Sequence record: OR805295.1
Strand: one strand, 5' to 3'
DNA length: 64,000 bases
Shown: positions 5,936 through 61,972 of the stretch, one piece after another
Layout: the number at the start of each line of letters is the position of its first letter
Position numbering within the stretch: the stretch's first letter is position 1
Program-made: the position numbers and the translations under genes
Notes under the pieces: generated by a model
What the model was told of the DNA's origin: nothing
The model's database searches: none
What the model saw: the letters and a program-made list of their open reading frames with translations, nothing else

Positions 5936-6009
5936 AATATAACCTAAAATAGCCAAAAAGTACAACTACAATGTTGGAAGGACGGCAGTATTATAAAAAA
6001 GGACATTTT

Positions 6010-6255
6010 ATGACAAAACCATTCGATATTTCTAAATTTAGAAAAGATATTACTAAAAGTATCACTGGCATTAGTACAGGATTTAATGACCCAACTATTT
6101 GGATTAGTACCGGCAACTATACTCTTAATTATCTCATTAGTAGCGACTTTAATAAAGGCGTACCTATGGGTAAAGTAACTATGTTTGCTGGCGAGTCGGG
6201 TTGTTTGCCTGAAACTGCTAAAGTGAAAATTAGACTATCTAAGAAGCAATCTTAA
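6010..6255 (+). CDS. uvsX: UvsX/RecA N-extein (64 aa) fused to a 17-aa split-intein N fragment (6202-6252)
   Basis: RecA N-terminus ISTGNYTLNYLIS...GKVTMFAGESG, then CLPETAKVKIRLSKKQS and a stop codon. Confidence 0.92.
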   Translation: MTKPFDISKFRKDITKSITGISTGFNDPTIWISTGNYTLNYLISSDFNKGVPMGKVTMFAGESGCLPETAKVKIRLSKKQS

Positions 6256-6264
6256 CTGTCCAGT

Positions 6265-6304
6265 GTCTCCGTCGAGGATAAATACTTTTATCTAAAACGG
6301 AGAC
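6265..6304 (+). promoter_or_regulatory. SD-sequestering hairpin containing a late promoter, upstream of the endonuclease gene
   Basis: GTCTCCGT 6265-72 pairs with ACGGAGAC 6297-6304, which includes the SD GGAG. Inner stem GATAAA/TTTATC; GATAAATA at 6277-84. Confidence 0.75.
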
Positions 6305-6307
6305 TTT

Positions 6308-7741: not shown

Positions 7742-7744
7742 TAA

Positions 7745-13270: not shown

Positions 13271-13522
13271 ATGAATTTTTATCAAGACGGAATTTATATA
13301 AAATTAGATGCAGATTTAAATGAACAATCGAACTTATTTAAATTAAAATCAGAATTATATGTACATTCGTATCCTACCCCTGATTTTTATAGATATATAA
13401 AAAATGGTAAAACCATGTTAGGGGTAGTATATGTCGGTTCATTAGAAACTGTATTTCTTAATATTATTAGCGGAGACTTTGACAAAGAAAAATTTTGTGC
13501 TATAATAGAAAAATACAAATAA
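13271..13522 (+). CDS. Hypothetical protein
   Basis: 83-aa ORF abutting uvsW. Confidence 0.55.
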   Translation: MNFYQDGIYIKLDADLNEQSNLFKLKSELYVHSYPTPDFYRYIKNGKTMLGVVYVGSLETVFLNIISGDFDKEKFCAIIEKYK

Positions 13523-13532
13523 AGGTGTAATT

Positions 13533-14036
13533 TTGAAAATTTTATTAACCGAAAATGAATCATACGAATTAGATAGAGTCCCGGACGACATAGAGGATAT
13601 ACGGTATTGTATATTAGATTGTAATGATAAATCTAATGTAGATTTTTACTTTTTGCCTCTTATATTTTTAGAAAGTTTTTATTCTCCCGCAGTTGTACTC
13701 AAGATAGGAAAGTACAGTATACAAATGCCCTTAGATTGGTCTATACTAGTATGCGACGAAGAATATTCTGATTTGGAAGTAGTACCACTTACTAGTCTAA
13801 ATGACAGGGGGTTTCATACAATAGTATTTAATCCACTAAAACACATGGTGCCTGTTCCTTCTGAAATAACAATAACTAGTGTATTTACTGAAGTAAAGTG
13901 GTATTTCCCTAAATTAAAAAGTGGTGCTGTCCTAGTTATTCCTTTAGAAGACGGACCTAATCCGAATTGTGCATTGTTTGTAAAAGAAGGGAATAAAATT
14001 CCTGATCCTATAGATATCGCAGAGTTATTTAAATAA
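13533..14036 (+). CDS. Conserved hypothetical protein
   Basis: TTG start with AAGGTG SD; FLPLIFLESFYSP...QMPLDWS...WYFPKLK. Confidence 0.7.
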   Translation: MKILLTENESYELDRVPDDIEDIRYCILDCNDKSNVDFYFLPLIFLESFYSPAVVLKIGKYSIQMPLDWSILVCDEEYSDLEVVPLTSLNDRGFHTIVFNPLKHMVPVPSEITITSVFTEVKWYFPKLKSGAVLVIPLEDGPNPNCALFVKEGNKIPDPIDIAELFK

Positions 14037-14503
14037 TGGCAGAAGAAAGCATTTTACCGCTTTGGATGGAATTGCAAGCATTAGATTATAATGATAGAGA
14101 TTTTTATGACAAGTTAACCGATGAACAGAAGAAAGTATTTTCATCGTGGATTATAATGAGATATTCTAGTAATATAATCGGTGATAATGCAGATTGGGGT
14201 CTTATAATGACCAATGATATTGTAAATGTGGATTTTTCATTAATGTACAAGCATCCTAAACTGCAATGGATGCTATTGTCGTTGTGTGGAACTGGAAGAA
14301 AAGAACAACGTAAATGGATTGCCCCAAATAAAAAGAAAAAAAAGAATCCGAGGAAAGAATTTATTTTTAAAATTCATCCAAACGCAAAAGATGATGAAAT
14401 CGATATGCTTGCAGATTTGTACACTGATGCAGAATTAAAGGATATTATGTTATCCTACGGTTATGAAGATAAAGAAATAAAAGATATTTTAAAGAAGAAA
14501 TAA
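14036..14503 (+). CDS. Probable clamp-loader small subunit (gp62-like)
   Basis: FYDKLTDEQKK...WIIMRYSS...KHPKLQWMLL...KWIAP resembles the gp62 family; gp44 is at 60009. Confidence 0.55.
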   Translation: MAEESILPLWMELQALDYNDRDFYDKLTDEQKKVFSSWIIMRYSSNIIGDNADWGLIMTNDIVNVDFSLMYKHPKLQWMLLSLCGTGRKEQRKWIAPNKKKKKNPRKEFIFKIHPNAKDDEIDMLADLYTDAELKDIMLSYGYEDKEIKDILKKK

Positions 14504-14516
14504 TTCTAGTAAGTAT

Positions 14517-15224
14517 ATGCAAGCATCTAAGAAAAATAAAAAGGCAACATCGATGGCAAAGTGCGAGTTTTGTAGTAAAGAATTTAAGTCAGAACGAACA
14601 ATAGCTGCTCATTTGTGTGTTAAAAAGAAGAGGTTTGCAGAAAAAGACACAGTCGGGTCTAGACTGGGATTTAGGGTATTTCAGCGATTCTACGAACTAA
14701 CTACTTCTTCTAAAACACCTAAATCTTTTAGAGAATTTATTGATAGTAAATTTTATATAGATTTTGTTAAATTTGGAAGACACCTAATAGATATTAATCC
14801 TATTAACACAGATGAATACATAGATTTCATAATAAAGAACGCTATACCGCTGTCTGATTGGAAAAAAGACTATGTATATGTAAGATATCTTAAAGAATAT
14901 ACTCAGAAAGAACCTGCACAAAAAGCACTAGAACGAACTATAATCGAGATGGGTACTTGGTGTACTGAAAATAATGTAGATATTGTAGATTTTTTTGAAA
15001 AAGTTAATACAGTAGAGGCAGTATATCTTATTAAATCAGGAAAGCTTAGTCCGTGGGTGTTATATCTGGCATCTTCTTCTGATAAATTGTGGGTTAGAAT
15101 AAATGAAGAACAAGAAAAATTTATTCAAACTGCTGTAGATTTTGACTGGTGGCAAAAGAAATTTATTGCAAATAAGGATGATGTTGACTTTATAGTGTCT
15201 GTATTGACAGAGGCTAAGTTGTAA
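14517..15224 (+). CDS. Conserved protein with an N-terminal C2H2/C2HC-type zinc finger
   Basis: CEFCSKEFKSERTIAAHLC. Confidence 0.65.
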   Translation: MQASKKNKKATSMAKCEFCSKEFKSERTIAAHLCVKKKRFAEKDTVGSRLGFRVFQRFYELTTSSKTPKSFREFIDSKFYIDFVKFGRHLIDINPINTDEYIDFIIKNAIPLSDWKKDYVYVRYLKEYTQKEPAQKALERTIIEMGTWCTENNVDIVDFFEKVNTVEAVYLIKSGKLSPWVLYLASSSDKLWVRINEEQEKFIQTAVDFDWWQKKFIANKDDVDFIVSVLTEAKL

Positions 15225-15225
15225 T

Positions 15226-15828
15226 ATGGCAAAAGTAGTTACTGATGTTGATATTGACGTAGCAGATAGGTTAACAGTTTTGTCTGGACTACAACATATA
15301 TCTGCTAAATTAGACGGAGTAGGAAAGAAACATTTATCTGGTGTATATTTTCAACCCATTCCGTTTGATCCGGAACAAAACATGAGCAACATAGATTATA
15401 AAGTTGCAGAAGAATTAGGCTACATGAAGATTGATCTTCTTAACGTGAGTATATACGAACAAGTTAGATCAGAGGAACATCTAAAGAAATTAATAGATAA
15501 AGAACCCAACTGGTCTTATTTTGAACATAAACAGATAGTTCAAAATTTATTTCATTTAGGAAATTATGCTGATCTAGCAGTAGGAATGAAACCGAAAAGT
15601 GTAGAACAGTTAGCAATGTTGCTGGCTGTTATACGTCCGAGTAAGTATCATTTACAATATAAACCTTGGGATATTATTGCCAAAACTGTGTGGGATAAGC
15701 CCAGCGACGGGTCATATCATTTTAAAAAAGCACATGCCATTAGTTATGCACTTGCAATTGTTGTTCAGTTGAATTTATTAGAAGAAGAAGCAGAACAAGA
15801 ACCCGATCCATTTAAGTTATTTTCCTGA
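15226..15828 (+). CDS. dnaE: Miniature DNA polymerase III alpha (family C), C-terminal catalytic half
   Basis: In 200 aa: TDVDID (PDxDxD), KHLSGVY (HAxGV), KIDLL (KxDxL), LAVIRP (LxRPG), HFKKAHAISYA (FNKSHxxxY). Confidence 0.85.
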   Translation: MAKVVTDVDIDVADRLTVLSGLQHISAKLDGVGKKHLSGVYFQPIPFDPEQNMSNIDYKVAEELGYMKIDLLNVSIYEQVRSEEHLKKLIDKEPNWSYFEHKQIVQNLFHLGNYADLAVGMKPKSVEQLAMLLAVIRPSKYHLQYKPWDIIAKTVWDKPSDGSYHFKKAHAISYALAIVVQLNLLEEEAEQEPDPFKLFS

Positions 15829-16210
15829 TTAAAGATACTTGTCGTCTTTTTATTCTCTTTTTGAGCATATTGTTAAGAGAAGTACATGGTCCGAAAACTA
15901 TTTTTATATCTTTGTTTACTAGGGTTTTTAGGCAATATCTAAATTCTGCCATTTCGTTTGGCATGAATATATTTATTGGTAATATCCTAGAAGATTCCCA
16001 CCACCAACAGTCACCGCATTGAAGAAATATATCTTTGTGTTGACTGTTTTTTAATGATTTAAAATCATAAAAACTTATATATTTGTCATCCGAATTTTGA
16101 ATAATTCCTATATAGAAATTTTCTAAGTGTTGTATGCCACTCAAAAATGGAAATTTTTCAGATAATTCTGCTAACTCTTGATCTATTGTATTATTATTTG
16201 TGTTGTCCAT
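15812..16210 (-). CDS. Conserved hypothetical protein
   Basis: 132-aa minus-strand ORF (KFPFLS...WWWESSRILPINIF) with AATAAATA upstream on the minus strand (16230-37). Confidence 0.7.
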   Translation of the reverse strand: MDNTNNNTIDQELAELSEKFPFLSGIQHLENFYIGIIQNSDDKYISFYDFKSLKNSQHKDIFLQCGDCWWWESSRILPINIFMPNEMAEFRYCLKTLVNKDIKIVFGPCTSLNNMLKKRIKRRQVSLIRKIT

Positions 16211-17142: not shown

Positions 17143-17171
17143 TTGACAACGAAAAACGTGCATGCTATAAT
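17143..17171 (+). promoter_or_regulatory. Consensus sigma70 promoter for primase-helicase
   Basis: TTGACA, 17 bp, TATAAT. Confidence 0.9.
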
Positions 17172-39737: not shown

Positions 39738-40427
39738 GTGTCGTTAAACAAAACTAAAACTGATGCCGAACTAGGCAAAAAAGTACAGCAATATTTAATC
39801 CAACAAGGAGTAGAAACTCCTATGCAAGAGCAGACTCTAAACGTTAAAGAGCGGATAGATAAAATTGAATCTCATTTTGTTGAAATTATGAATGCACTTG
39901 CGTTGGATCTTTCTGACGATAGTCTTGCAGAAACGCCTCGCCGAGTAGCAAAAATGTATGTATCTGAGATATTCTATGGGTTGGATTATGAGGCATTTCC
40001 TAAATGCACCACTATTGAAAATAAATTTAATGCAAATGAAATGGTCTTAGTAAAAGATATAGATTTATATTCTCAGTGCGAACATCATATTTTACCAATA
40101 ATTTCTGGATCATCTTCTGGTCGAGGTGGAATATCGGTTGCTTATATTCCTAAAAATAAAGTAATAGGTCTCTCTAAATTAAATAGAGTGGCAGAATTTT
40201 TCTGCAAGCGACCTCAAGTTCAAGAACGACTCACATTGCAAATATTTCATGCATTACAGTATATTCTGGAAACAGACGATGTTGCTGTTTTGATTAACGG
40301 AAGGCATCTGTGTGTGGAATCTAGGGGCGTAGAAGATACAAGTTCGAGTACGATAACTTCTAAATTAAGTGGTGCATTTAGCAACGATCCTGCCACCCGT
40401 GCAGAATTTATGTCTCTTGTAAAATAA
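39738..40427 (+). CDS. folE: GTP cyclohydrolase I
   Basis: ETPRRVAKM, SQCEHHILP, GLSKLNR, RPQVQERL, HLCVESRG; GTG start with AGGAGG SD. Confidence 0.96.
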   Translation: MSLNKTKTDAELGKKVQQYLIQQGVETPMQEQTLNVKERIDKIESHFVEIMNALALDLSDDSLAETPRRVAKMYVSEIFYGLDYEAFPKCTTIENKFNANEMVLVKDIDLYSQCEHHILPIISGSSSGRGGISVAYIPKNKVIGLSKLNRVAEFFCKRPQVQERLTLQIFHALQYILETDDVAVLINGRHLCVESRGVEDTSSSTITSKLSGAFSNDPATRAEFMSLVK

Positions 40428-40431
40428 CAAA

Positions 40432-40464
40432 AACTACTATGGATAGATACTATCCATAGTAGTT
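40432..40464. repeat. Perfect 15-bp inverted repeat between folE and queD
   Basis: AACTACTATGGATAG-ATA-CTATCCATAGTAGTT, no U tract. Confidence 0.9.
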
Positions 40465-40494
40465 ACACATAGCATATTAATAAGGAATATAAAA

Positions 40495-41013
40495 TTGTGG
40501 CAGATTAATAAAAGTTTCAGTTTTGCATATGCTCACAGAGTCCATAATCAACACTTAGATGCAGATTTAGTTGAAGACACCAAATGCAAATGCAGGCATT
40601 TACACGGACATACAGGTAAAGTAGTTATTCATTTAACTGGAACTTCTTTAGTAAACGGTATGGTAACTGATTTTAAGCATTTAGGTTTTCTTAAAAAATT
40701 TATAGATGACGTAATCGACCATAAGTTTATTATAGATGCAAACGATCCTAATTTTAGTAAGATAACCAATGCATCTAAATATTCTACTATAAGTTTTGAG
40801 CACTATGGAATATTCGATACATCTGAAGAGACAGTAGAACACGAAAAGGAACATGCAGATAGTTTTGTAATAGTAGATTTTGTTCCTACTGCAGAAAATT
40901 TAGCTAAATGGATTTGGGAATATGCTGAAAGCATTTTAGAACAAAAAGGTATAACTGTTTCTAAAGTAGAATGGTGGGAAACTGATAAAGCTTGTGCAAC
41001 ATATATTGCATAA
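40495..41013 (+). CDS. queD: 6-carboxytetrahydropterin synthase / PTPS family, copy 1
   Basis: YAHRVH, CKCRHLHGH, MVTDF, DHKF, PTAENLA, WWET. Confidence 0.88.
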   Translation: MWQINKSFSFAYAHRVHNQHLDADLVEDTKCKCRHLHGHTGKVVIHLTGTSLVNGMVTDFKHLGFLKKFIDDVIDHKFIIDANDPNFSKITNASKYSTISFEHYGIFDTSEETVEHEKEHADSFVIVDFVPTAENLAKWIWEYAESILEQKGITVSKVEWWETDKACATYIA

Positions 41014-41030
41014 TATAAAGGTAGATATAA

Positions 41031-42257
41031 ATGTCGAAAGAAACATGCTCTTATTGCAATAAAGGCAAAGATGATGTGTCTAAGTTGTTTCGTAGCCCTG
41101 CTAAATATGGATCAAATGTATATATATGTGACCAGTGTGTAACTCAGTGCAACAATTTTTTAGAAACTGCTGAAACAAATGATCGGGAATCTAATAAATT
41201 AGAAATAAAATACACACCTGAAGAACTAAAGGAATTGCTAGATAAAGACATTGTAGGGCAAGATCACGCAAAAGAATTACTAAGTCTAGCAGTGTATAAT
41301 CATTATAAACGGGTAAACTATAACACTACTGAACATGATGTAGAGTTATCTAAATCTAACATAATGCTACTGGGACCTTCAGGCAGCGGTAAGACATTTT
41401 TAATATCTAGTATATCTAAATTGTTAAACATACCTTTTGTTTCTGTAGATTCTACTTCGCTAACAGAGGCAGGATATGTCGGAGATCATGTAGAGACTAT
41501 ATTTACTAGATTAATCGCAGAAGCAAATGGTGACATAGAACTAGCGCAACGTGGAATCGTATTTATAGATGAAATAGATAAGAAACGTTCTAAAAAAGGA
41601 ACAAATTCTGCAGGATCTGATGTTTCCGGCGAAGGCGTCCAACAGTCTTTACTTCGGGTGCTAGAAGGAACAACGATTAAATTAGAACTAAATTCTAACA
41701 GTATGTTTAGTCCTAGACAGGAAATTATGTTTGACACAACTAACGTTTTGTTTATAGTTGGCGGCGCATTTATAGGATTAGATGCAGTAATAAATAAAAG
41801 ACTTAGTTCTACTAAATCTCAAATGGGATTTGGTTCCGAAGCTGGTAAACCCATAGAAGGTAGTTTATTCTATGTAGAACCGGAAGATTTGTATACATAC
41901 GGTTTTATAAGAGAATTTGTAGGGAGATTTCCTGTTCTTATTGCGTTTCATGATGTAACAGAGACTATGCTTCGTCGAATTCTAGTAGAGCCTAAAAGTT
42001 CTATACTTAAACAATATCAAACTATGTTTAAATTAGATAACATTGAATTAGAATTCGATGAAGATTTTATAAAATCTGTTGCTACTACAGCGTTTAATAG
42101 GAAAACAGGCGCTCGTGGTTTAAGAACTATTTTAGAAAAAGAACTATCTAGTATAGCATATAGATTGCCTTCTATAAGACGAGAAGGGTTTAGCAAGATT
42201 ATTATACACGAACTAGGAAAACATAATTTCATAAAAGGGCAAAATGAAGACATTTAA
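41031..42257 (+). CDS. clpX: ATP-dependent Clp protease ATPase subunit ClpX
   Basis: CSYC...CDQC zinc-binding domain, GPSGSGKT, GYVG, IDEIDK, VSGEGVQQSLL, GARGLR. Confidence 0.95.
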   Translation: MSKETCSYCNKGKDDVSKLFRSPAKYGSNVYICDQCVTQCNNFLETAETNDRESNKLEIKYTPEELKELLDKDIVGQDHAKELLSLAVYNHYKRVNYNTTEHDVELSKSNIMLLGPSGSGKTFLISSISKLLNIPFVSVDSTSLTEAGYVGDHVETIFTRLIAEANGDIELAQRGIVFIDEIDKKRSKKGTNSAGSDVSGEGVQQSLLRVLEGTTIKLELNSNSMFSPRQEIMFDTTNVLFIVGGAFIGLDAVINKRLSSTKSQMGFGSEAGKPIEGSLFYVEPEDLYTYGFIREFVGRFPVLIAFHDVTETMLRRILVEPKSSILKQYQTMFKLDNIELEFDEDFIKSVATTAFNRKTGARGLRTILEKELSSIAYRLPSIRREGFSKIIIHELGKHNFIKGQNEDI

Positions 42258-42450
42258 TATAATTACTGGTCTTACTGTAGAAGTAAGACACGATAACTTT
42301 AACCAAGCACTTAGAACTTTTACTAAAAAGGTTCAAAATTCAGGAAAATTAAAAGAAGTTCGAGAACGCGAATTCTATGAAAAGCCTTCTGTAAAAAAGA
42401 CAAAAGCTAAAAAAGCAGCAATTCAACGCCAGAAAAAGAAAAAAATATAA
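42244..42450 (+). CDS. rpsU: Ribosomal protein bS21
   Basis: VEVR...ALRTFTKK...EVREREFYEKPS. Confidence 0.88.
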   Translation: MKTFNIITGLTVEVRHDNFNQALRTFTKKVQNSGKLKEVREREFYEKPSVKKTKAKKAAIQRQKKKKI

Positions 42451-42452
42451 TA

Positions 42453-42788
42453 ATGGATCTTTGCAGGATTTTAAATAATGAACTTATGTTTTGCAGAAAT
42501 CGCAGGAATAAACTCTATTATGGCCTACGGCAATTGAATAAAGTTGACATCCCTGTAGATCCTGCAGATTCTTTACTTATTTCCAGCATAAAAATGGATA
42601 TAGAACAGCTCCAATCGTATAAAGATGCTATATCCGAATGCAGTAGACTTGAACAACGTATAATCTGTATAGATAAAACTATGCAGTATATCCGTCGGTA
42701 TTGCAATCATAAGTTTGTGTATCACAATACTAATTATCATACAAATACAGATGCAGAAAAATGCATTTATTGCGGATTAATAATTTAA
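42453..42788 (+). CDS. Hypothetical protein
   Basis: 111 aa; C-terminal CNH...CIYC. Confidence 0.55.
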   Translation: MDLCRILNNELMFCRNRRNKLYYGLRQLNKVDIPVDPADSLLISSIKMDIEQLQSYKDAISECSRLEQRIICIDKTMQYIRRYCNHKFVYHNTNYHTNTDAEKCIYCGLII

Positions 42789-42789
42789 T

Positions 42790-43260
42790 ATGGCATATTT
42801 TTCAACTAAGAGATTTGGACCTATTTCCACTGGCCATCGTCAATGGAAAGATACGGGTCATTGCAGCAGAATACACGGATACGGAAGAACAGTGAAGATT
42901 GTTTTTTCTGCTACTACATTAGATGATAAATTGTGGGTAGTAGATTTCGGTGGATTGAAAGATTTTAGGAAATGGCTGGAAGAACAATGGGATCATAATG
43001 TTTTAGTTGCATCTGACGATCCCAAGTTAAATATCCTTAAACAAATGGAACAAGAAGGTCTAGTTAAATTAAATATAATGGATGTTAAAAAAGGCCATGG
43101 TCCCGGAATAGAAGGTTCATGTAAGCATCTGTTTGACTATTTGAATCCCATTATAGAAAAACAATCTGGCGGAAGATGTTGGGTCCATAGTATAGAAATA
43201 TGGGAACACGAAAACAATTCCGCTATATACGAAACATATAAGTCAACATTTAAAAGATAA
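42790..43260 (+). CDS. queD: QueD/PTPS-family protein, copy 2 (HGY variant)
   Basis: TGHRQW, HCSRIHGY, WVVDFGGLK, DH, EHENNSA. Confidence 0.8.
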   Translation: MAYFSTKRFGPISTGHRQWKDTGHCSRIHGYGRTVKIVFSATTLDDKLWVVDFGGLKDFRKWLEEQWDHNVLVASDDPKLNILKQMEQEGLVKLNIMDVKKGHGPGIEGSCKHLFDYLNPIIEKQSGGRCWVHSIEIWEHENNSAIYETYKSTFKR

Positions 43261-46447: not shown

Positions 46448-48178
46448 ATGCAACATATTGTTAAGTTCATAAAAAATAACAGATTTATTATTTTATTTCT
46501 TGTAATATGCATAACTGGATTTGCGTTAACGATTAATTACAAGCCGACTAGTGTGTCTATAAACACCTTTTTATCAGACGCAACGAGCGGTAAAATAATT
46601 AGTGTTAAATTAAAAGAAGATGGACAAACACTACAGTATGTTACTAATACATCAGACAGAAGAAAAGTAACATTCCCCGGAGATACCAGTAAATTAATAG
46701 AATCATTTCTTAAAGCAGGTGTTCCTGTAGTAACTGAAGAACCTTCTACCCCTAGTCCATTCCTTACTAGTTTGGTGTCTGGACTTATAGTAATGTTAGT
46801 ATTTTTAATTTTAATGGTATTCGTTTTGAAGCGAATGGGTCCTGGTTCTTCATTAGATGCAAAAAGTAAATCCAAACTTCGCAAGATAGAACCAAAAGAC
46901 ATTGAAGTAACGTTTAACGATGTAGCTGGTCATACTCACGAAATAAATGAAGTAAAAGAGTTAGTTGATTTTATTGCTCATCGATCTAAGTATTCTAGCA
47001 TGGGAATAGATGTGCCTCGTGGAATTCTAATGCACGGCAGTCCGGGCGTCGGGAAAACACTTTTAGCAAAGGCAATGGCAAAAGAGGCAAATGTTAATTT
47101 TTTCTATGTTGCTGGATCTGAGTTTAATGATACATTTGTCGGTGTAGGTGCAAACCGTGTAACAGATATGTTTAAAAAAGCAAAGGAAGCTGCGCCGTGC
47201 ATTATTTTCATAGACGAAATTGATGCACTTGCACAACAACGTTCTACTAAAATATCTAATGGGTCAGACCAAACACTCAATCAGTTATTAGTAGAAATGG
47301 ATGGAATGCAAGATAACGATGGTATTACAATTCTTGCAGCTACTAATAGACTAGATATATTAGACCCGGCTGTTATTCGTCCTAAACGATTTGACAGAAT
47401 TGTTCAACTAAGTTTACCCGATGTGGGGATTAGACAGAAGATTTTAGAAATAAATGCAAATGGAAAAACATTTGAAGACAATGTAGATTTTTCAGTAATA
47501 GCAAAAGGAACTCCGGGATTCTCTGGTGCTGAGTTGGCTAAACTAGTCAATGAGGCTGCAATCTATGCAGTGAGGTCTGGACAAACTGTAATTACCCAAG
47601 AGCATATAGAACGAGCAAAAGATAAGGTGTTAATGGGTGAAAATTCGACAAAGAAATATACCCAGGAAGAATTGCTTCGTACTGCATACCATGAAGCCGG
47701 TCATGCAATATCAGGTGTAATTTACAAATCCAATGATAACTTGCATAAAGTATCTATCATTCCTCGAGGTCTAGCACTAGGTGTAACTGTATTTCTTCCT
47801 AACGAAGAGCCTTCTGTTAGCAAAGAGCAGCTCATGAATAAATTAGTTACTTTAATGGCAGGCCGTGCAGCAGAAGAACTCATATACGGTGAGTCTGCAA
47901 TATCCACCGGCGCAAGTTCAGATATAAAGAGAGCAACTGAACTTGCAGTATACATGACTACATCGTGTGGTTTCGGTAGTATAGGACCGGTTGCGACATC
48001 GACCCTGTCTAGTTTGCAATCTAGTGCAGAACAAGATGCAGCAATTCTAGTAAAAGATGCGTACAATAAGGCTATAACATTACTTTCGGATAAAAAGGCT
48101 GAATTAAAACTTGTAGCAGACTTGTTAATGGAAAAAGAAACAATAGATTGTGCAGAAGTAGAACAAGTTCTTGCATAA
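46448..48178 (+). CDS. ftsH: ATP-dependent zinc metalloprotease FtsH
   Basis: Two TM helices, GSPGVGKT, FIDEID, TLNQLLVEMDG, HEAGH, GASSD. Confidence 0.96.
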   Translation: MQHIVKFIKNNRFIILFLVICITGFALTINYKPTSVSINTFLSDATSGKIISVKLKEDGQTLQYVTNTSDRRKVTFPGDTSKLIESFLKAGVPVVTEEPSTPSPFLTSLVSGLIVMLVFLILMVFVLKRMGPGSSLDAKSKSKLRKIEPKDIEVTFNDVAGHTHEINEVKELVDFIAHRSKYSSMGIDVPRGILMHGSPGVGKTLLAKAMAKEANVNFFYVAGSEFNDTFVGVGANRVTDMFKKAKEAAPCIIFIDEIDALAQQRSTKISNGSDQTLNQLLVEMDGMQDNDGITILAATNRLDILDPAVIRPKRFDRIVQLSLPDVGIRQKILEINANGKTFEDNVDFSVIAKGTPGFSGAELAKLVNEAAIYAVRSGQTVITQEHIERAKDKVLMGENSTKKYTQEELLRTAYHEAGHAISGVIYKSNDNLHKVSIIPRGLALGVTVFLPNEEPSVSKEQLMNKLVTLMAGRAAEELIYGESAISTGASSDIKRATELAVYMTTSCGFGSIGPVATSTLSSLQSSAEQDAAILVKDAYNKAITLLSDKKAELKLVADLLMEKETIDCAEVEQVLA

Positions 48179-50372: not shown

Positions 50373-51146
50373 ATGACACCACGTTTAAAGGAATTACTAG
50401 AATCACTTATAATTTTAGATACAGAAACTACACATTTAGATACTCGTGTAGCAGAAATAATAGAATTAGGTATAGCGTCTTATACTAACAAATGGACTTA
50501 TAGTAGTGAATTATTTAAACCCAGAGTCAATCATGCGCAAATAACTCCTAAAATAAGTTCTATAACTGGCATAACAGATCGTATGGTAGAAGGAAAACCT
50601 ACTTTTGCTGATGTAGTCGACCAATACAAATCTATTACAAACTGCCAACTAATAGTTGCACACAATGCTCCGTATGATAAAAAGGTACTAGAGAGATATA
50701 ACATAGCATCTAGCACTAATTGGTTGTGTACTTTAAAACTTGCACGATATGCATATCAAACTGATCCTACTTTTGAAGAATTTAAATTATCTTATCTAAG
50801 ATATAAATTAATGTTAGATATTCCTGACGATTTCGTAGCGCATAGAGCAGGAGAAGATGCATATATGTGCGGTGTATTATTAGAACGAATAGTAACCGAT
50901 TTAGAGTCTAAGAATAAATTAGATAGTGATATGCCGTATGCAGATCAACTTATAGAAATATCTAATAAGCCGTTAATGCTTTCGTCTATGCCATTTGGCA
51001 AACATAAAGATAAACCCTTAGATGAAGTTCCGATGGACTATTGGATTTGGGCATTAAATAATTTAGATGCATTAGACGAAACAAAACCCGAATATAATAG
51101 AGACTTAGCGTATACATTAGAACAATATTTGAGCGACAAGATATAA
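50373..51146 (+). CDS. DEDDh 3'-5' exonuclease (DnaQ/ExoX-like) with C-terminal MPFGKH domain
   Basis: LDTETT, HNAPYD, HRAGEDA, MPFGKHK...DYWIW. Confidence 0.88.
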   Translation: MTPRLKELLESLIILDTETTHLDTRVAEIIELGIASYTNKWTYSSELFKPRVNHAQITPKISSITGITDRMVEGKPTFADVVDQYKSITNCQLIVAHNAPYDKKVLERYNIASSTNWLCTLKLARYAYQTDPTFEEFKLSYLRYKLMLDIPDDFVAHRAGEDAYMCGVLLERIVTDLESKNKLDSDMPYADQLIEISNKPLMLSSMPFGKHKDKPLDEVPMDYWIWALNNLDALDETKPEYNRDLAYTLEQYLSDKI

Positions 51147-57239: not shown

Positions 57240-57740
57240 ATGGCAACTGTGAACCAAAAAAATACTTCTGTAAATGCCCAAGCTACCGATGCAAATGCAG
57301 ATCCACTAGCGCACCGCAAGGTAATCGGGGAAAAAGAGAAAAAAGCTATTGCTCGTAAAATGCGAGTATTGCGACTGAAATATTTTTTCGCCGAATTAAA
57401 GGAAAAAATTTGCAGTATTCGTTTTACTAAACATCATCTAATTCATTGGCGAAATACTATGTGGCTCAACGCTGCATTTTTTCTCCGCGGCTTAGTAGGG
57501 ATTATGACCTTCGGCCTTGTTGAGTTAGAACTAACTGGCAAACCGTCTACTTACCGAGCTGTTTCTGCTGCTGTGCTCCGAGAGAACCTGGAGCGACAGC
57601 TAGCAGAGACAGAAGCATATAAGTCCGGAGAACAAGTCCTAGTAGGTACTAGTAGTTCGGATTCAAAACGGCAAACAGTTGCCGATGCGAGTGAAGATGA
57701 GTTGGACGACTGGCTCAAGCACTTTTCCGGACGCAGCTAA
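57240..57740 (+). CDS. Hypothetical protein
   Basis: GGAG SD; 166 aa; GC-richer than background. Confidence 0.6.
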   Translation: MATVNQKNTSVNAQATDANADPLAHRKVIGEKEKKAIARKMRVLRLKYFFAELKEKICSIRFTKHHLIHWRNTMWLNAAFFLRGLVGIMTFGLVELELTGKPSTYRAVSAAVLRENLERQLAETEAYKSGEQVLVGTSSSDSKRQTVADASEDELDDWLKHFSGRS

Positions 57741-57755
57741 GACCTGCATAGTTGT

Positions 57756-57795
57756 AAAAGGGCACTTGACAAGTGCCCTTTTTTTGCCATATAAT
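57756..57795 (+). terminator. Terminator whose loop is a sigma70 -35 box
   Basis: AAAAGGGCACTT-GAC-AAGTGCCCTTTTTTT; TTGACA at 57766-71, 18 bp, TATAAT at 57790-95. Confidence 0.8.
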
Positions 57796-57815
57796 ATAGG
57801 AAAAGGAATTTCTAT

Positions 57816-58112
57816 ATGATTAACGGCGATTGGTCTAAATTAACAGATGAAGAATTGCAGTCTAGATTGATGAAAGCAAGGGAATATTTAAATCAAGCAC
57901 ATATGGCTGGCCATCATACATTAATACACAGTGTAGAAATAACACTGGCACAACTAGAAGAAGAATACGAATACAGGATGACCAAGGCACGTAATGAGCA
58001 ATTAACAAAAGAAAATATGGCAAAAGGTATAGATCCCCTTGCTCCTATTAATTTAGGTAAAGTATCGGGTGACCCAACTGCATTAGACCGTATAACAAAA
58101 AGGAACAAATAA
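57816..58112 (+). CDS. Hypothetical coiled-coil protein
   Basis: 98 aa; AAGGA SD. Confidence 0.6.
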   Translation: MINGDWSKLTDEELQSRLMKAREYLNQAHMAGHHTLIHSVEITLAQLEEEYEYRMTKARNEQLTKENMAKGIDPLAPINLGKVSGDPTALDRITKRNK

Positions 58113-58820
58113 ATGTTTGCTGACGTACAAGGGTTTTATTCTTTTAAAAGAAAATTTAAAACACACGTTCTTACTTCTGTATTAAAAGAAACTGAATGGG
58201 AAATTATAATTGGATTCGTTCCTGCAAAGGATGCAAGCAACGGAGAAGATTTAATTGATTTTGAAGTTCAAAAAAATATAATAGATTACTGGATTTCTAA
58301 TTACGTAGAAGGCAGTATTATCGTCGATATGAGCGATACTAGAATTTCTATGTTGTATGATATAGCAGAAAATAACATAATAGGTGTTCCTAGTTTTCCT
58401 AAAGATTTAAAAACACTAGCAATGGTTTTTCATTCTAAGATTTCATCTATAACAGATGGTAAGCTATCTATAGGTGACATTATTATATCAGACGATAGTA
58501 ATTTTAGTTACACATTCGGAAAACATGTAGATGAAATATATGATCTTCCTACAATAGACGATATGTTTCCTAATGAAGATGAAAAACCTATATGGGACGT
58601 GCCGTGGTGGGATAGGGTTGATGTAGATACATTTGATTATGTTCCTGATTTAGAAAATCGTACATTAGAAGAAGTACAAATGTCTGTTTGTACAAGACAT
58701 GTGTTAAATGATATTAACGATAAGTTCGAAGCTGCAATAAAAGAAGAATTGGGTATAAATGTAGAAACTGAAGACAATGTTGTAGACATAGTTGATGTTT
58801 TAAATGAACGACAAATATAA
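58113..58820 (+). CDS. Conserved hypothetical protein (acidic)
   Basis: 235 aa; PWWDRVDVDTFD; overlaps the start of the dnaE N-half. Confidence 0.65.
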   Translation: MFADVQGFYSFKRKFKTHVLTSVLKETEWEIIIGFVPAKDASNGEDLIDFEVQKNIIDYWISNYVEGSIIVDMSDTRISMLYDIAENNIIGVPSFPKDLKTLAMVFHSKISSITDGKLSIGDIIISDDSNFSYTFGKHVDEIYDLPTIDDMFPNEDEKPIWDVPWWDRVDVDTFDYVPDLENRTLEEVQMSVCTRHVLNDINDKFEAAIKEELGINVETEDNVVDIVDVLNERQI

Positions 58821-59313
58821 TAGAAAAGAAATAACTATAACAACAGGCATAAATATCCTTTTGCAAGGGAACCAGCTGGGAGATCCACTCTTTGTTGACA
58901 ATGAAGACATAAACAAGTATAATATGCACGTAGAACAAGTATTAGGGTTGCATAAACTTAATACGACGAAACACTTAACTTGTTCTGTTGATGAATTTCA
59001 TGAAAAAATGTCTTCAGAATGGTTTATGCCACCGGAATTTAAAAATATAGATATAGATTCTTTTATATTAAATTTATGTGACACTGATGCACAAAAAGAA
59101 AGAGTATTAATGGAACTGAAACTCTTTCAAGAACGCAGTTTATACAATATGCTAAGATTTATGATATATTTTGTATCATATATGAGGGAAAATTGCCTTA
59201 TCTGGGGTGTGGGTCGCGGGTCTAGTGTTGCGTCTTATGTATTATTTTTAATAGGCGTGCATAAAGTAGATTCACTAAAATATAATTTAGATATAAAAGA
59301 ATTTCTAAAATAA
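58804..59313 (+). CDS. dnaE: Miniature DNA polymerase III alpha (family C), N-terminal palm half
   Basis: RVLMELKLF...LIWGVGRGSSVASYVLFLIGVHKVDSLKYNLDIKEFLK matches DnaE GPGRGSxAGSLVAYxLxITxxDPLxYxLLFERFLN. Confidence 0.85.
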   Translation: MNDKYNRKEITITTGINILLQGNQLGDPLFVDNEDINKYNMHVEQVLGLHKLNTTKHLTCSVDEFHEKMSSEWFMPPEFKNIDIDSFILNLCDTDAQKERVLMELKLFQERSLYNMLRFMIYFVSYMRENCLIWGVGRGSSVASYVLFLIGVHKVDSLKYNLDIKEFLK

Positions 59314-59325
59314 AAGGAGTTAATT

Positions 59326-59667
59326 ATGCAAAAAAAATCTAACAATGGCGTATTAGTAGATATGGATTCACTCCGTATTCAAAATGAAAATGTAGTTGCA
59401 GTGGGAAACATGAATGTTAACGCAAAAGGCGACAAGTTGGGTCCAGGCGGCGAAATTATAGAAACTGCCGCCGAGCGAGTTCACAGATACCATTCTGAAC
59501 ATCAAACAGAAACTGCAACAGCTTCTATCAAACCCAATCTAGATGAAGAAGATGAGCACGAAGAAGTAGTACAACCTAAAAAAGTTACAAAAGAAAAACG
59601 TAAGAAAGAAATTATAGATGACGAAGGGAACATTACTATAACAGAAGATAGTAATAAAGATATTTAA
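59326..59667 (+). CDS. Conserved hypothetical protein
   Basis: VDMDSLRIQNE...AVGNMNVNAKGDKLGPGG. Confidence 0.65.
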   Translation: MQKKSNNGVLVDMDSLRIQNENVVAVGNMNVNAKGDKLGPGGEIIETAAERVHRYHSEHQTETATASIKPNLDEEDEHEEVVQPKKVTKEKRKKEIIDDEGNITITEDSNKDI

Positions 59668-59668
59668 A

Positions 59669-59995
59669 ATGAATATAATACCACTTCATAACAATATTAT
59701 TGTAACTAATTTTAAAAAAGGCGAACGCACGGTAGGCGGTATTATTTTTACAGATGATAACGGTAAGTCACACGGCATCCGCGCTCGATGGGCACAAGTA
59801 TCCCATATAAGAGAAGATCAAAAAGATACATTTGTTGTAGGCCAATGGGTGTTAATTAAGCACGGTCGTTGGTCCCGTCCAGTACACACTACAGATCAAA
59901 ATGTATATTACTGTGCTGAAATAGATTCTATTTTATTGGTATCTGATGAAGAGCCAGAAGACAATATAATAGTAGAAACACGAGTTTATAATTAA
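59669..59995 (+). CDS. groES: Co-chaperonin GroES-like (gp31-type)
   Basis: IIPLHNNIIV...GERTVGGII...VGQWVLI...DSILLV. Confidence 0.8.
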   Translation: MNIIPLHNNIIVTNFKKGERTVGGIIFTDDNGKSHGIRARWAQVSHIREDQKDTFVVGQWVLIKHGRWSRPVHTTDQNVYYCAEIDSILLVSDEEPEDNIIVETRVYN

Positions 59996-60008
59996 GGCAT
60001 AATATCTA

Positions 60009-60938
60009 ATGAAAGAATTATGGACAGAAAAATATCGTCCTAAAAAAGTAGAAGATTACGTATTTACTAGTGAACAGCAAAAGAAGCAAGTACAAAGTTG
60101 GATAGACAATAAAAGTATTGGAAATCTTTTGCTTACTGGTACGCCCGGTGTAGGCAAAACTACTTTAGCTAGGTTACTGTTAAATGAATTAGGAGTAATG
60201 GATGCCGATTGTCTGTTCATTAACGCATCTAGAGATAACGGTGTAGATTTTATTAGGGACACAGTTAGTGGGTTTGCTTCTACATTACCGTTCGGTGATT
60301 TTAAATATATTATACTAGACGAGTGTGACCATTTAAGTATAAATGCACAAGCAACACTTCGCGGAATATTAGAGCAATATTCAAATTCTTGTAGATTTAT
60401 TCTCACAGGTAATTATCAAAATAAAATTATCCCTGCATTACACAGTCGTTGTCAGAGTTTCCACGTAGAAAAAGTAGATGAAGTCGAATTTACTACACGA
60501 ATGGCGACTATACTTTTAAATGAAGGCATTAGTTTTGAATTAGAAGTGTTAGACGATTTCGTAAAATCTACGTATCCTGATCTTAGAAAATGCATTAATG
60601 TACTTCAGCAGAATACAACTAGTGGTGTATTAGAAATACCGCAAGCATCTAGTGTAACAACAGAAGATTATAAGATTAGTGCAATTGCTCTGTTTAAAAA
60701 TGGAAAATATTCCGAAGCAAGGCAACTTATATGTAAACAAATACGACAAGAAGAGTATGATGATATGTATAGGTTTATGTATGATAATTTAGATCTTTGG
60801 GGTGATACTGATGATCAAAAAGATAGTGCAATTCTTATTATTAGAAATGGCTTATCTAAACACTCATTAGTTGCTGATCCGGAAATAAACTTATCAGCAA
60901 CAATTATAGAACTAGAACGAAACAGACGAGGACTTTAA
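60009..60938 (+). CDS. Clamp-loader large subunit (gp44/RFC-like AAA+)
   Basis: WTEKYRP, GTPGVGKT, INAS, LDECD, SRC. Confidence 0.93.
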   Translation: MKELWTEKYRPKKVEDYVFTSEQQKKQVQSWIDNKSIGNLLLTGTPGVGKTTLARLLLNELGVMDADCLFINASRDNGVDFIRDTVSGFASTLPFGDFKYIILDECDHLSINAQATLRGILEQYSNSCRFILTGNYQNKIIPALHSRCQSFHVEKVDEVEFTTRMATILLNEGISFELEVLDDFVKSTYPDLRKCINVLQQNTTSGVLEIPQASSVTTEDYKISAIALFKNGKYSEARQLICKQIRQEEYDDMYRFMYDNLDLWGDTDDQKDSAILIIRNGLSKHSLVADPEINLSATIIELERNRRGL

Positions 60939-60939
60939 T

Positions 60940-61302
60940 ATGGTTTCAACTAAACGAGCATACATTGTACTGACTCATCGATATTCACTAAAGAAATACA
61001 CTAAAGACCAATGGGAAGTAACAGAAGAGTGTTCATTTCTTAATAAATTGCCGAATTCTGTGTTGCTTCAATCGTCTGTTATTTTAGATGCAAAGACAGA
61101 AACTGTATATAAAAATAGAACAGAAGGCAATGCATCATATAACGAAATTGCAAAATATGTTGCCGAAAAATATCCCATTCAGTTTGGGCAATTTTATAGC
61201 CTTTTAGGTAAAGAGAATCCATTTGCAATAAAAGAATCAAATACTGCCAGCGAAGAAACCACAGAACCCGAAAATAGCGAGACAGAATCTAGTGAGCAAT
61301 AA
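60940..61302 (+). CDS. Hypothetical protein
   Basis: 120-aa ORF. Confidence 0.6.
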   Translation: MVSTKRAYIVLTHRYSLKKYTKDQWEVTEECSFLNKLPNSVLLQSSVILDAKTETVYKNRTEGNASYNEIAKYVAEKYPIQFGQFYSLLGKENPFAIKESNTASEETTEPENSETESSEQ

Positions 61303-61888
61303 TCTTATACTAGTAGATGTTGATGGTGTACTTTTAAAATGGTATCCCGAATTTTTAAATTTTTTGAAATCTAAAAACCTTATACCGCAAGATAGTAATA
61401 TTGTTGCATCTACGTATGATATGGCATCTGACTTAAAATTAGATAAAGATGCCATTAATGAACTTATAACAGAGTTTAATAATTCTAGTGCAATGCGATA
61501 TCTGTCTCCCATGGATAACGCAGTAGATGCTATTAATAAATTAAAAGATAAAGGATTTAGTTTTGTTGCTATTAGTAGCTTAAGTGGGAAAGAACATGCA
61601 CTAGATAATAGAAAATACAATATCTCTGAAGTATTCGGCAAAGAAGTGTTTGATGAAGTCCACTGCATAGAGCCTGGACTAAGTAAAGAAGAATTGTTAA
61701 AGAAATATTCTAAAGATGCAATTCTCTGGATAGAAGACCATCCAGGTAACGCAGAATTAGGTCACAAACTCGGTATAAAAACTGTTCTTGCACTTCATCC
61801 TCATAATACAAATGTAAAAACTTCTAAAAATATTATAAGGATTGATATAGACAAACTTTGGACCGAAATAGAAAATATTGTAAACTAA
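61292..61888 (+). CDS. HAD-family 5'(3')-deoxyribonucleotidase-like phosphatase
   Basis: LVDVDGVL, ISS, K, WIEDH. Confidence 0.8.
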   Translation: MSNNLILVDVDGVLLKWYPEFLNFLKSKNLIPQDSNIVASTYDMASDLKLDKDAINELITEFNNSSAMRYLSPMDNAVDAINKLKDKGFSFVAISSLSGKEHALDNRKYNISEVFGKEVFDEVHCIEPGLSKEELLKKYSKDAILWIEDHPGNAELGHKLGIKTVLALHPHNTNVKTSKNIIRIDIDKLWTEIENIVN

Positions 61889-61890
61889 CA

Positions 61891-61972
61891 AAAATAAAAC
61901 CCTAACTAGTTAGGGTTTTATTTTGGGTTTAATAATTAAACAAAATAAAAGGGGCATATGCCCCTTTTATTT
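61891..61972. terminator. Two tandem bidirectional terminators between convergent genes
   Basis: AAAATAAAACCCTAAC-TA-GTTAGGGTTTTATTTT and AAATAAAAGGGGCA-TA-TGCCCCTTTTATTT. Confidence 0.85.

What the first reader, a model, noticed from the sequence alone, without database searches (positions are those of the whole stretch)
58113..60938. N-terminal half of the split mini-DnaE sits in a separate operon with GroES and the gp44 clamp loader
Seen: a 169-aa ORF carrying the DnaE GRGS palm segment and stopping at the FLN-equivalent, preceded by an overlapping conserved acidic ORF and followed by groES and gp44. The other half (15226) lies two genes from the gp62-like subunit, so each polymerase half is linked to one clamp-loader subunit. 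The first ~60 aa do not look like a PHP domain. Inference: an ancestral replication cluster was split by rearrangement while the polymerase survived as a non-covalent heterodimer.
Basis: partly seen in the sequence, partly recalled or inferred. Interest (0 to 1): 0.75.

Follow-up and report, generated by a model that had tools for sequence, protein, structure and literature searches.

The report
Split mini-DnaE polymerase, N-terminal half
This jumbo phage encodes a miniature bacterial-type DNA polymerase core as two separate small proteins from genes 43 kb apart, each next to a clamp-loader gene; the split enzyme was already described in 2021, so only the conserved gene neighbourhoods and one rare fused form are new here.

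Summary
The window is bases 1-64000 of Pseudomonas phage Paride (PA5oct-like, group 2.2 jumbo phage). ORF 58804-59313 (169 aa) carries the DnaE GRGS palm segment and stops at the FLN-equivalent. ORF 15226-15828 (200 aa) continues about six residues later with the DxDxD metal-binding strand, the third catalytic Asp and minimal fingers motifs.

The core is already known. Iyer et al. 2021 (PMC7824862) described this [quoted passage not shown] beside a family B polymerase. GenBank already labels both Paride ORFs "DNA polymerase".

New here:
- N-half > small conserved ORF > GroES-like > gp44 is found in 50 of 50 informative IMG/VR loci and in four divergent isolates.
- The C-half sits in a fixed block: UvsW-like helicase, gp62-like candidate, zinc-finger ORF, C-half, convergent ORF, primase, DnaB.
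- The halves are never within 10 kb of each other (0 of 160 loci).
- One metagenomic fused form (375 aa) exists. It lies at the C-half locus and nests among split forms, so the fusion looks secondary.

An obligate non-covalent heterodimer is well supported. An ancestral cluster broken by rearrangement is not.

The parts
57766..57795 (+). Perfect sigma-70 consensus promoter (TTGACA-18-TATAAT) in the 75-nt gap before ORF 57816; likely start of the transcription unit
   Evidence: 12 of 12 match. An RNA-seq contig of a near-identical strain starts at 57801, 6 nt after the -10 box. PA5oct promoters are of the TTGAC/TATAATA type (PMC7318152).
57816..58112 (+). 98-aa ORF, first gene of the cluster, function unknown
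58113..58820 (+). 235-aa acidic ORF that overlaps the N-half start by 17 nt; fast-evolving; distant T-fold/PTPS-like lead only
   Evidence: pI 4.21. Homolog in Atu_ph07 gp317 at E 1e-6. Found in 3 of 76 IMG/VR loci. Atlas search.
58804..59313 (+). N-terminal half of the split minimal Pol III alpha (mini-DnaE): helical N-terminal part plus the GRGS nucleotide-binding loop; ends at the FLN-equivalent
   Evidence: PF07733 E 1.1e-8; phrog_11127 E 6.6e-46. 5542 stand-alone homologs of about 170 aa. Invariant R100, G135, G137, R138, G139, S140. AF2 pLDDT 89.5, and the top PDB folds are Pol III alpha chains. Aligns to E. coli alpha 322-392.
59212..59223 (+). Codons of the GRGS motif (residues 137-140)
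   Evidence: Invariant columns in A1; aligned to GPGRGS of Taq Pol III alpha.
59326..59667 (+). 113-aa conserved small ORF (phrog_14844), always between the N-half and GroES; conserved N-terminal 60 aa followed by a charged tail
   Evidence: phrog_14844 E 4.3e-11. Atu_ph07 E 6e-6, Vibrio phage E 2e-14. Present in 77 of 80 IMG/VR loci.
59669..59995 (+). GroES / T4 gp31-like co-chaperonin
   Evidence: Cpn10 E 1.7e-4, 22.0 bits against a cut-off of 21.1; phrog_931 and phrog_3188. Present in 73 of 80 loci.
60009..60938 (+). gp44-type AAA+ clamp-loader large subunit
   Evidence: phrog_168 E 2.4e-81; Pfam AAA, DNA_pol3_delta2 and Gp44_lid. 31% identity to T4 gp44 at E 9e-28.
60940..61302 (+). 120-aa ORF after gp44; conserved in Atu_ph07, absent in 121Q; not shown to be gp62
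61292..61888 (+). HAD-like phosphatase (phrog_420), last gene of the co-directional cluster
61891..61972 (.). Two strong hairpins with T-runs between the cluster and the convergent phoH gene; likely bidirectional terminators
   Evidence: RNA-seq contig coverage ends at about 61794-61922.
15226..15828 (+). C-terminal half of the mini-DnaE: DxDxD strand (D7, D9, D11; nt 15244-15258), third Asp D70 (nt 15433-15435), and fingers motifs RP.K (137-140) and K167/H170
   Evidence: phrog_11778 E 1.7e-63. Invariant columns. Motif-by-motif alignment to M. tuberculosis DnaE1 413-424, 566-665 and 773-788. AF2 pLDDT 89.3, and the top 13 PDB folds are C-family polymerases.
14517..15224 (+). C2H2 zinc-finger protein (phrog_11058) directly upstream of the C-half; GenBank start is 14553
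   Evidence: phrog_11058 E 9e-61. Atu_ph07 gp077 E 6e-43. Present in 59 of 59 informative IMG/VR loci.
14036..14503 (+). Candidate gp62-like clamp-loader small subunit (phrog_11758 family)
   Evidence: Atlas neighbours include clusters carrying PF16790. Two of 68 members hit phrog_225, the T4 gp62 family. Negative in Pfam and hhalign. Present in 58 of 59 loci.
15812..16210 (-). Convergent 132-aa ORF (phrog_11637) overlapping the 3' end of the C-half; marks the C-half locus, including next to the fused form
   Evidence: Present in 77 of 80 loci. Homolog next to fused P0318 at E 2e-7.

Best explanation
ORF 58804-59313 is the N-terminal subunit of the split minimal Pol III alpha (C-family, Pol-beta-like nucleotidyltransferase) that characterises group 2.2 jumbo phages. 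ORF 15226-15828 is its C-terminal subunit.

Proposed mechanism (inferred). The two proteins assemble non-covalently. The segment leading into GRGS in the N-half pairs with the five-stranded sheet of the C-half to complete the palm. The N-half supplies the GS loop that holds the triphosphate of the incoming dNTP. The C-half supplies the three metal-binding aspartates (D7/D9/D11 and D70) and a cut-down fingers module (RP.K, K..H) that contacts the dNTP and the template.

The enzyme has no PHP, thumb, beta-binding or OB domain. It most likely acts as an accessory, low-processivity DNA polymerase (gap filling, repair, or a specialised step of replication) beside the phage's family B replicase.

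The split is ancient. It predates the radiation of the family, and each gene is fixed in its own collinear replication module. The N-half is co-transcribed with a small conserved ORF, a GroES-like co-chaperonin and gp44. The C-half lies behind a gp62-like candidate and a zinc-finger protein, and ahead of primase and DnaB.
For: Shown:
- Identity of the window and of the group (PMC10761892).
- Family assignment of both halves.
- The two halves cover contiguous DnaE sequence with a gap of only about 6 residues: the N-half ends at M. tuberculosis DnaE1 residue 406 and the C-half starts at 413.
- The GS loop and all three Asp positions are invariant across 120-sequence alignments.
- Both families are very large and uniform in length: 5542 and 1050 hits, about 170 and 190 aa.
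- Record counts per genus are near-identical in isolate genomes: Escherichia 34/34, Pseudomonas 11/11, Erwinia 8/8, Xanthomonas 4/4, Yersinia 4/4.
- A natural fusion, P0318, joins them in the expected order with a 9-aa linker.
- Synteny holds in Atu_ph07, Vibrio phage 2.275.O, 121Q and RaK2 and in 160 IMG/VR loci.
- RNA-seq contigs span 57705-61794 and 57801-61003.
- A family B polymerase is present in PA5oct-like phages (PMC6892783).
- The published description is the same (PMC7824862).
Against: - There is no biochemical or structural evidence for the complex or for polymerase activity, here or in the searchable literature.
- No complex model was run.
- Fold matches to Pol III alpha are weak in E-value (0.06 and 0.003), as expected for fragments.
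- Without a thumb and with most of the fingers missing, templated synthesis is not assured.
- Gene neighbourhoods are part of genome-wide collinearity and do not prove a functional tie to the clamp loader.
- RNA-seq contigs cannot prove a single transcript.
Confidence: 0.75

Rival explanations
1. The halves once lay in one replication cluster with gp44 and gp62, for example N-half ... gp44 | gp62-like, zinc finger, C-half. A single rearrangement then separated them, leaving each half with one clamp-loader subunit.
For: Each half is tightly and almost universally linked to one candidate clamp-loader gene. In T4, genes 44 and 62 are adjacent. A single breakpoint between them would give today's two blocks.
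Against: No sampled genome keeps the blocks together: 0 of 160 IMG/VR loci within 10 kb, and isolates are 30-224 kb apart. The only adjacent or fused case is nested among split forms, sits at the C-half locus and lacks the zinc-finger neighbour, so it looks secondary. gp62 identity is weak.
Confidence: 0.15
2. Never-fused relic (Iyer et al.). The two-protein minimal enzyme reflects the ancestral, pre-fusion state of the Pol III catalytic module. It is not a reduced and broken bacterial DnaE.
For: In the outgroup-rooted C-half tree the basal lineages are all stand-alone C-halves, and the fusion is derived. No accessory DnaE domains are present in any member. This view is published.
Against: The break falls inside the core Pol-beta fold, between the GS helix and the DxD strand. 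That is an unlikely boundary for two independently evolved proteins. The GRGS segment is about 40% identical to bacterial DnaE, which fits descent from a full-length enzyme by domain loss. Rooting with two very long outgroup branches is fragile.
Confidence: 0.25
3. The reconstituted palm is not a templated DNA polymerase. It is another kind of nucleotidyltransferase: terminal transferase, primer or tail addition, or synthesis of a nucleotide signal or decoy used in phage-host conflict.
For: The thumb, most of the fingers, and the beta-binding, HhH and OB domains are absent. Many minimal Pol-beta-fold enzymes are template-independent (established knowledge of the superfamily).
Against: The retained fingers motifs (RP.K, and F.K.H...Y aligned to NKSHAAGY of DnaE1) are the C-family dNTP/template contacts. 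The genes sit only in replication modules.
Confidence: 0.12
4. The ORFs are decaying fragments of a broken dnaE gene with no joint function.
For: Small size, and a split inside the fold.
Against: There are thousands of homologs of constant length with invariant catalytic residues. Synteny is conserved across phages of Pseudomonas, Agrobacterium, Vibrio, Escherichia and Klebsiella. The region is covered in RNA-seq.
Confidence: 0.02

Closest known systems
Split minimal DNA polymerase III alpha of group 2.2 jumbo phages (Iyer, Anantharaman, Krishnan, Burroughs, Aravind 2021, Viruses 13:63; PHROGs 11127 + 11778)
   Same: It is the same thing. It has an N-terminal NTP-binding protein and a C-terminal Mg- and template-binding protein. 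Their genes are distantly located, and they accompany a family B polymerase. Paride is placed in group 2.2 by its describers.
   Different: Nothing differs in kind. Three points added here were not found in the searched passages of that paper: the invariant neighbourhoods of each half, the weak gp62-like identity of the C-half neighbour, and one derived fused form.
Bacterial DnaE / Pol III alpha (E. coli 2HNH/5FKU, Taq 2HPI/3E0D, M. tuberculosis DnaE1 5LEW)
   Same: Pol-beta-like palm with GRGS, DxDxD and a third Asp; fingers motifs RPGP-like and KSH-like; these are the top fold matches for both halves.
   Different: 369 aa in two chains against about 1160 aa in one. It has no PHP, thumb, beta-binding, HhH, OB or tau-binding domains. 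It is not the main replicase.
Cyanobacterial split DnaE joined by a split intein
   Same: The catalytic subunit is encoded by two distant genes.
   Different: The break point is different. There are no intein fragments: the N-half aligns to DnaE up to its last residues and the C-half from residue 4. The halves cannot be spliced, so they must act as a non-covalent pair.
T4 gp44/gp62 clamp loader with gp31 co-chaperonin
   Same: The gp44 homolog is clear (31% identity to T4 gp44). The GroES/gp31-like protein is marginal but specific.
   Different: The genes for the two clamp-loader subunits are not adjacent. The gp62-like candidate lies 45.5 kb upstream of gp44 and is barely recognisable by sequence.

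Membership tests
C-family DNA polymerase (DnaE / Pol III alpha) | Pol-beta-like palm: GS nucleotide-binding loop, DxD strand and a third catalytic Asp | tested here: met
   GRGS 137-140 in the N-half; D7/D9/D11 and D70 in the C-half. All are invariant and align to the DnaE motifs. The feature is met only by the two ORFs together.
C-family DNA polymerase (DnaE / Pol III alpha) | N-terminal PHP domain | tested here: not met
   No PF02811 hit. Only about 95 residues precede the aligned palm segment, and they are mostly helical in the AF2 model.
C-family DNA polymerase (DnaE / Pol III alpha) | Thumb, full fingers, beta-clamp-binding, HhH and OB domains in one polypeptide of about 1100 aa | tested here: not met
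   The C-half jumps from DnaE1 residue 424 to 566 within about 40 residues and ends shortly after the KSH helix. The two chains total 369 aa.
C-family DNA polymerase (DnaE / Pol III alpha) | Template-directed DNA synthesis | not testable with these tools
   This needs biochemistry. None was found in the literature searched.
Split minimal Pol III alpha of group 2.2 jumbo phages | Two stand-alone proteins (about 170 and 190 aa) from distant genes in one genome | tested here: met
   58804-59313 and 15226-15828 are 43 kb apart. The same pair occurs in related phages 30-224 kb apart.
Split minimal Pol III alpha of group 2.2 jumbo phages | Accompanied by a family B polymerase and a T4-like replisome | tested here: inconclusive
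   gp44, primase, DnaB, SSB and UvsX are in the window. PolB and gp45 are not. PolB is reported for the near-identical MIJ3 (PMC6892783).
Intein-joined split DnaE | Split-intein fragments at the break | tested here: not met
   The N-half aligns to DnaE to its end and the C-half from residue 4. There is no spare sequence.
T4 gp62 clamp-loader small subunit (PF16790 / phrog_225), for ORF 14036-14503 | Sequence or profile similarity to gp62 | tested here: inconclusive
   For: Atlas neighbours include clusters carrying PF16790 (score 0.94, TM 0.70), and 2 of 68 family members hit phrog_225 at E 0.0038. Against: 0 of 68 members hit Pfam, hhalign to T4 gp62 gives probability 0.2%, and T4 gp62 was not among the PDB profile hits at E<=10.
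GroES / Cpn10 (T4 gp31-like), for ORF 59669-59995 | Cpn10 profile match above the curated cut-off | tested here: met
   22.0 bits against a cut-off of 21.1, which is marginal; also phrog_931 and phrog_3188.
RFC/gp44 AAA+ clamp loader, for ORF 60009-60938 | AAA+ module with a gp44-type lid; similarity to T4 gp44 | tested here: met
   phrog_168 E 2.4e-81; Pfam AAA, DNA_pol3_delta2 and Gp44_lid; tblastn with T4 gp44 at E 9e-28.

The most novel reading that the evidence does not exclude
The mini-polymerase is physically built into the clamp-loader machinery, as Pol III alpha is tethered to the tau/gamma complex in bacteria. The N-half would assemble with gp44 (and the small ORF 59326 or the GroES-like protein), and the C-half with the gp62-like subunit and the zinc-finger protein. 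The active site would then form only when a complete clamp loader assembles on DNA. This would be a phage 'holoenzyme' that couples a bacterial-type catalytic core to an archaeo-eukaryotic-type clamp loader, and it would explain why each half has stayed next to one clamp-loader gene throughout the family.
Probability: 0.08. Interest if true: 0.75.

Novelty: already known. Interest (0 to 1): 0.3.

Why it matters
A 369-residue, two-chain version of the bacterial replicase core would be the smallest known C-family polymerase. It bears on how Pol III evolved, whether as a relic or by reduction, and it is a compact scaffold for enzymology. It has never been tested biochemically.

- The partner genes are defined.
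- A natural single-chain form, P0318, is available for expression.
- The conserved neighbours point to candidate interaction partners: the small ORF 59326, the zinc-finger ORF 14517 and the gp62-like ORF 14036.

The discovery itself belongs to Iyer et al. 2021, so the finding is confirmatory.

Tried and rejected
- **Intein trans-splicing.** Rejected: there is no spare sequence at the break.
- **PHP remnant in the first 60-95 aa.** Rejected: no Pfam hit, and the region is short and mostly helical.
- **ORF 60940-61302, directly after gp44, as the gp62 equivalent.** No support in PDB, PHROGs or the Atlas, and it is absent in 121Q.
- **Direct proof that 14036-14503 is gp62-like.** Pfam, a PDB profile search and hhalign against T4 gp62 were all negative. 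Only the Atlas and two weak phrog_225 hits support it.
- **C-terminal tail of the Paride C-half (…PDPFKLFS) as a conserved clamp-binding motif.** It is not conserved: 30 of 192 tails are hydrophobic or aromatic.
- **More fused forms.** None in IMG/VR. The JGI metagenome scan returned only full-length DnaEs. Hits 151-368 of the representative search could not be listed.
- **The two 235-aa ORFs upstream of each half.** One is acidic (pI 4.2) and the other is a basic zinc-finger protein (pI 8.9). They belong to different families, so the equal length is coincidence.
- **Pseudogene fragments.** Rejected on conservation.
Full report
**Identity of the window**

tblastn of both ORFs gives 100% matches at the same coordinates in Pseudomonas phage Paride, OR805295.1 (287,267 bp; Arenbergviridae, Wroclawvirus). 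Matches to PA5oct, MIJ3 and their relatives are 98-100% identical. Its describers place Paride in 'group 2.2' of jumbo phages (PMC10761892). GenBank already labels both ORFs 'DNA polymerase'.

**Observation**

ORF 58804-59313 (169 aa) matches Pfam PF07733 DNA_pol3_alpha over profile positions 21-94 (E 1.1e-8). It matches phrog_11127, a 171-position 'DNA polymerase' family, end to end (E 6.6e-46). A profile of 120 homologs aligns its last 70 residues to E. coli alpha 322-392 and to Taq alpha 410-454 (GPGRGS...ERFL).

ORF 15226-15828 (200 aa) matches phrog_11778 (E 1.7e-63). Its profile aligns motif by motif to M. tuberculosis DnaE1:
- TDVDIDxxDR to PDIDIDFDDR (413-424);
- GYxKIDLLN...IRPxK to GLLKMDFLG...YRPGP (566-665);
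- YxFKKSHAxSYA to YAFNKSHAAGYG (773-788).

The N-half ends at DnaE1 residue 406 and the C-half begins at 413. The two ORFs are therefore a clean cut in the loop between the helix after the GS motif and the DxD strand.

Invariant columns across 120-sequence alignments are R100, G135, G137, R138, G139 and S140 in the N-half. In the C-half they include D7, D9, D11, K68, D70, N73, R137, P138, K140, K167 and H170. From established knowledge of C-family polymerases (E. coli D401, D403, D555), these are the metal-binding and dNTP-binding positions.

AF2 models are confident (pLDDT 89.5 and 89.3). The best PDB fold matches for both are Pol III alpha chains, with modest scores as expected for fragments. 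In the isolated N-half model, DSSP assigns no strand around the GRGS loop. The C-half has a five-stranded sheet. This fits a palm that is completed only in the complex (inference).

- A conserved 113-aa ORF (59326-59667, phrog_14844) lies between the N-half and the GroES-like gene.
- The overlapping upstream ORF 58113-58820 is acidic (pI 4.21), but it is detectably conserved only in Atu_ph07 and in 3 of 76 IMG/VR loci.
- No PHP domain is present.

**Prior knowledge**

Iyer et al. [quoted passage not shown] It accompanies a family B polymerase. They suggest it helps in synthesis of one strand or in repair, and they read it as a model of the ancestral enzyme.

PA5oct-like phages carry a PolB interrupted by an intein/HNH element (PMC6892783). 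PolB and gp45 lie outside this window. A full-text search found no later or experimental work. The core of the finding is therefore already known.

**Neighbourhoods**

The N-half block is: upstream ORF, N-half, phrog_14844 ORF, GroES-like, 0-5 inserted genes, gp44, then (small ORF) HAD phosphatase and PhoH. The N-half-to-gp44 core of this block (N-half, small ORF, GroES-like, inserts, gp44) is present in Paride, Atu_ph07, Vibrio phage 2.275.O and 121Q; the flanking members are not all present in every genome.

Among 80 IMG/VR N-half loci, 50 have at least 6 kb downstream. All 50 carry the small ORF, the GroES-like gene and gp44 on the same strand. The gp44 start lies a median 2.06 kb after the N-half end. 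None of the 80 contains a C-half.

The C-half block is: UvsW-like helicase, phrog_11279 ORF, 14036 family, zinc-finger ORF, C-half, convergent phrog_11637 ORF, structural-like ORF, primase, DnaB. It is present in Paride, Atu_ph07, the Vibrio phage and RaK2.

Among 80 IMG/VR C-half loci, none contains an N-half, gp44 or a GroES-like gene. Of the 59 loci with more than 3 kb upstream, 59 have the zinc-finger ORF and 58 have the 14036 family; 53 of those 58 lie within 3 kb.

**Is it an operon?**

The genes from 57816 to 61888 are separated by -17 to +13 nt. A perfect sigma-70 consensus lies at 57766-57795, and strong hairpins lie at 61891-61972. RNA-seq contigs of a roughly 98-99% identical strain cover 57705-61794 as one piece. 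Another piece covers 57801-61003 and starts 6 nt after the -10 box. This fits one transcription unit, but contigs cannot prove a single transcript.

**gp62-like claim**

ORF 14036-14503 has no Pfam, PDB or hhalign support. Its Atlas neighbours include clusters in which 11-13% of members carry PF16790 Phage_clamp_A (feature score 0.94, 225 of 256 shared features; structural TM 0.70). Two of 68 family members hit phrog_225, the family of T4 gp62, with best E 0.0038. Given the prior hypothesis, this is weak but specific support. The ORF directly after gp44 (60940-61302) shows no such signal and is missing in 121Q.

**Fused form**

A search of 1.84 billion representative proteins with the C-half gave 368 hits. 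Among the 150 listed, all but one are stand-alone or truncated C-halves. The exception is P0318 (375 aa), whose residues 189-372 match the C-half. Its N-terminal part is 43% identical to the N-half over residues 70-169, ending ...IKEFIK. A 9-residue linker follows, then ADFDIDT....

P0318 lies on a single 2.4-kb metagenome contig. The convergent downstream ORF there is homologous to Paride 15812-16210 (E 2e-7), so the fused gene occupies the C-half locus.

Its C-part groups (SH-aLRT 95) with the stand-alone C-halves P0302 and P0339. P0339 has the zinc-finger gene immediately upstream, which is the usual context. With two full-length DnaEs as outgroup, P0318 sits eight nodes deep among stand-alone forms, with supports of 94, 86, 75, 83, 86 and 95 along the path. 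The fusion is therefore most likely secondary.

Three cautions apply: the tree came from a quick search, the outgroup branches are long, and there is only one contig. No relatives of the fused form were found in IMG/VR or in JGI metagenomes.

**Interpretation**

An obligate heterodimer is well supported by four points:
- a complementary, composite active site;
- no intein;
- near-identical record counts per genus in isolate genomes (Escherichia 34/34, Pseudomonas 11/11, Erwinia 8/8, Xanthomonas 4/4, Yersinia 4/4);
- a natural fusion in the expected order.

The separation is universal in the sampled diversity and the only joined form looks derived. A single breakpoint between gp44 and a gp62-like gene would neatly produce today's two blocks, so the idea stays possible but untested. 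Whether the enzyme is a relic or a reduced DnaE cannot be decided here.

**Function**

Catalytic residues are invariant across the sampled members of both families, which argues for an active nucleotidyltransferase. The retained C-family fingers motifs and the exclusive residence in replication modules argue for templated DNA synthesis as an accessory to PolB. The loss of the thumb and of the processivity domains leaves room for a non-canonical activity.

**Verdict**

The object is already described. The additions made here are modest but useful: universal synteny, a weak gp62 link and one derived fusion.

Noticed in passing
window 58895-58923 (+): A second perfect sigma-70 consensus (TTGACA-17-TATAAT) lies inside the N-half ORF, ending at codon 40. 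It could drive extra transcription of the downstream genes. The conserved core of the N-half in Rak2-like phages starts only at about residue 66. In the RNA-seq strain, position 58902 reads C instead of T.
   Followed up: partly
window 13479-13506 and 17143-17171 (+): Two more perfect consensus promoters lie just upstream of ORF 13533 and of the primase gene. They bracket the C-half block.
   Followed up: no
window 15796-15828 (C-terminus of the C-half): The Paride-type C-half ends in an acidic stretch followed by PDPFKLFS, which resembles a clamp-binding tail. It is specific to this lineage: only 30 of 192 family tails are hydrophobic or aromatic.
   Followed up: partly
window 58113-58820; also 39822-43260: The acidic ORF upstream of the N-half has a distant T-fold / 6-pyruvoyl-tetrahydropterin-synthase-like lead in the Atlas (feature score 0.84; TM 0.59 measured through a neighbour's model). 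The same window carries an annotated GTP cyclohydrolase and two QueD-like genes.
   Followed up: partly
window 5971-10844: By GenBank annotation, the UvsX-like recombinase appears in two pieces (5971-6255 and 7745-9016). A 477-aa hypothetical ORF lies between them and a homing-endonuclease gene follows. This looks like another interrupted replication/recombination gene, alongside the intein-split PolB reported for MIJ3.
   Followed up: no
window 50373-51146: This ORF is annotated 'DNA polymerase exonuclease subunit' (DnaQ/epsilon-like). RaK2 has a similar gene directly before the UvsW-like helicase of the C-half block. It is a candidate proofreader for a polymerase that lacks PHP.
   Followed up: no
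window 46448-48178: A 576-aa hypothetical protein has a Walker-A region that matches T4 gp44 residues 42-84 (E 6e-6), so the window holds a second AAA+-type ATPase.
   Followed up: no
L176:8366-12382: A metagenomic full-length DnaE is encoded as two adjacent ORFs: a PHP part of 382 aa and a polymerase core of 933 aa. This is a different split point in the same enzyme family.
   Followed up: no
window 57240-57740: In the RNA-seq contig tables, the word depth over this 166-aa ORF is 3 to 200 times higher than over the cluster that follows. The drop falls at about 57800.
   Followed up: no
window 13533-14036: This 167-aa ORF (phrog_11279) is a constant member of the C-half block (57 of 80 loci). 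It has no detectable family in Pfam or the PDB.
   Followed up: partly
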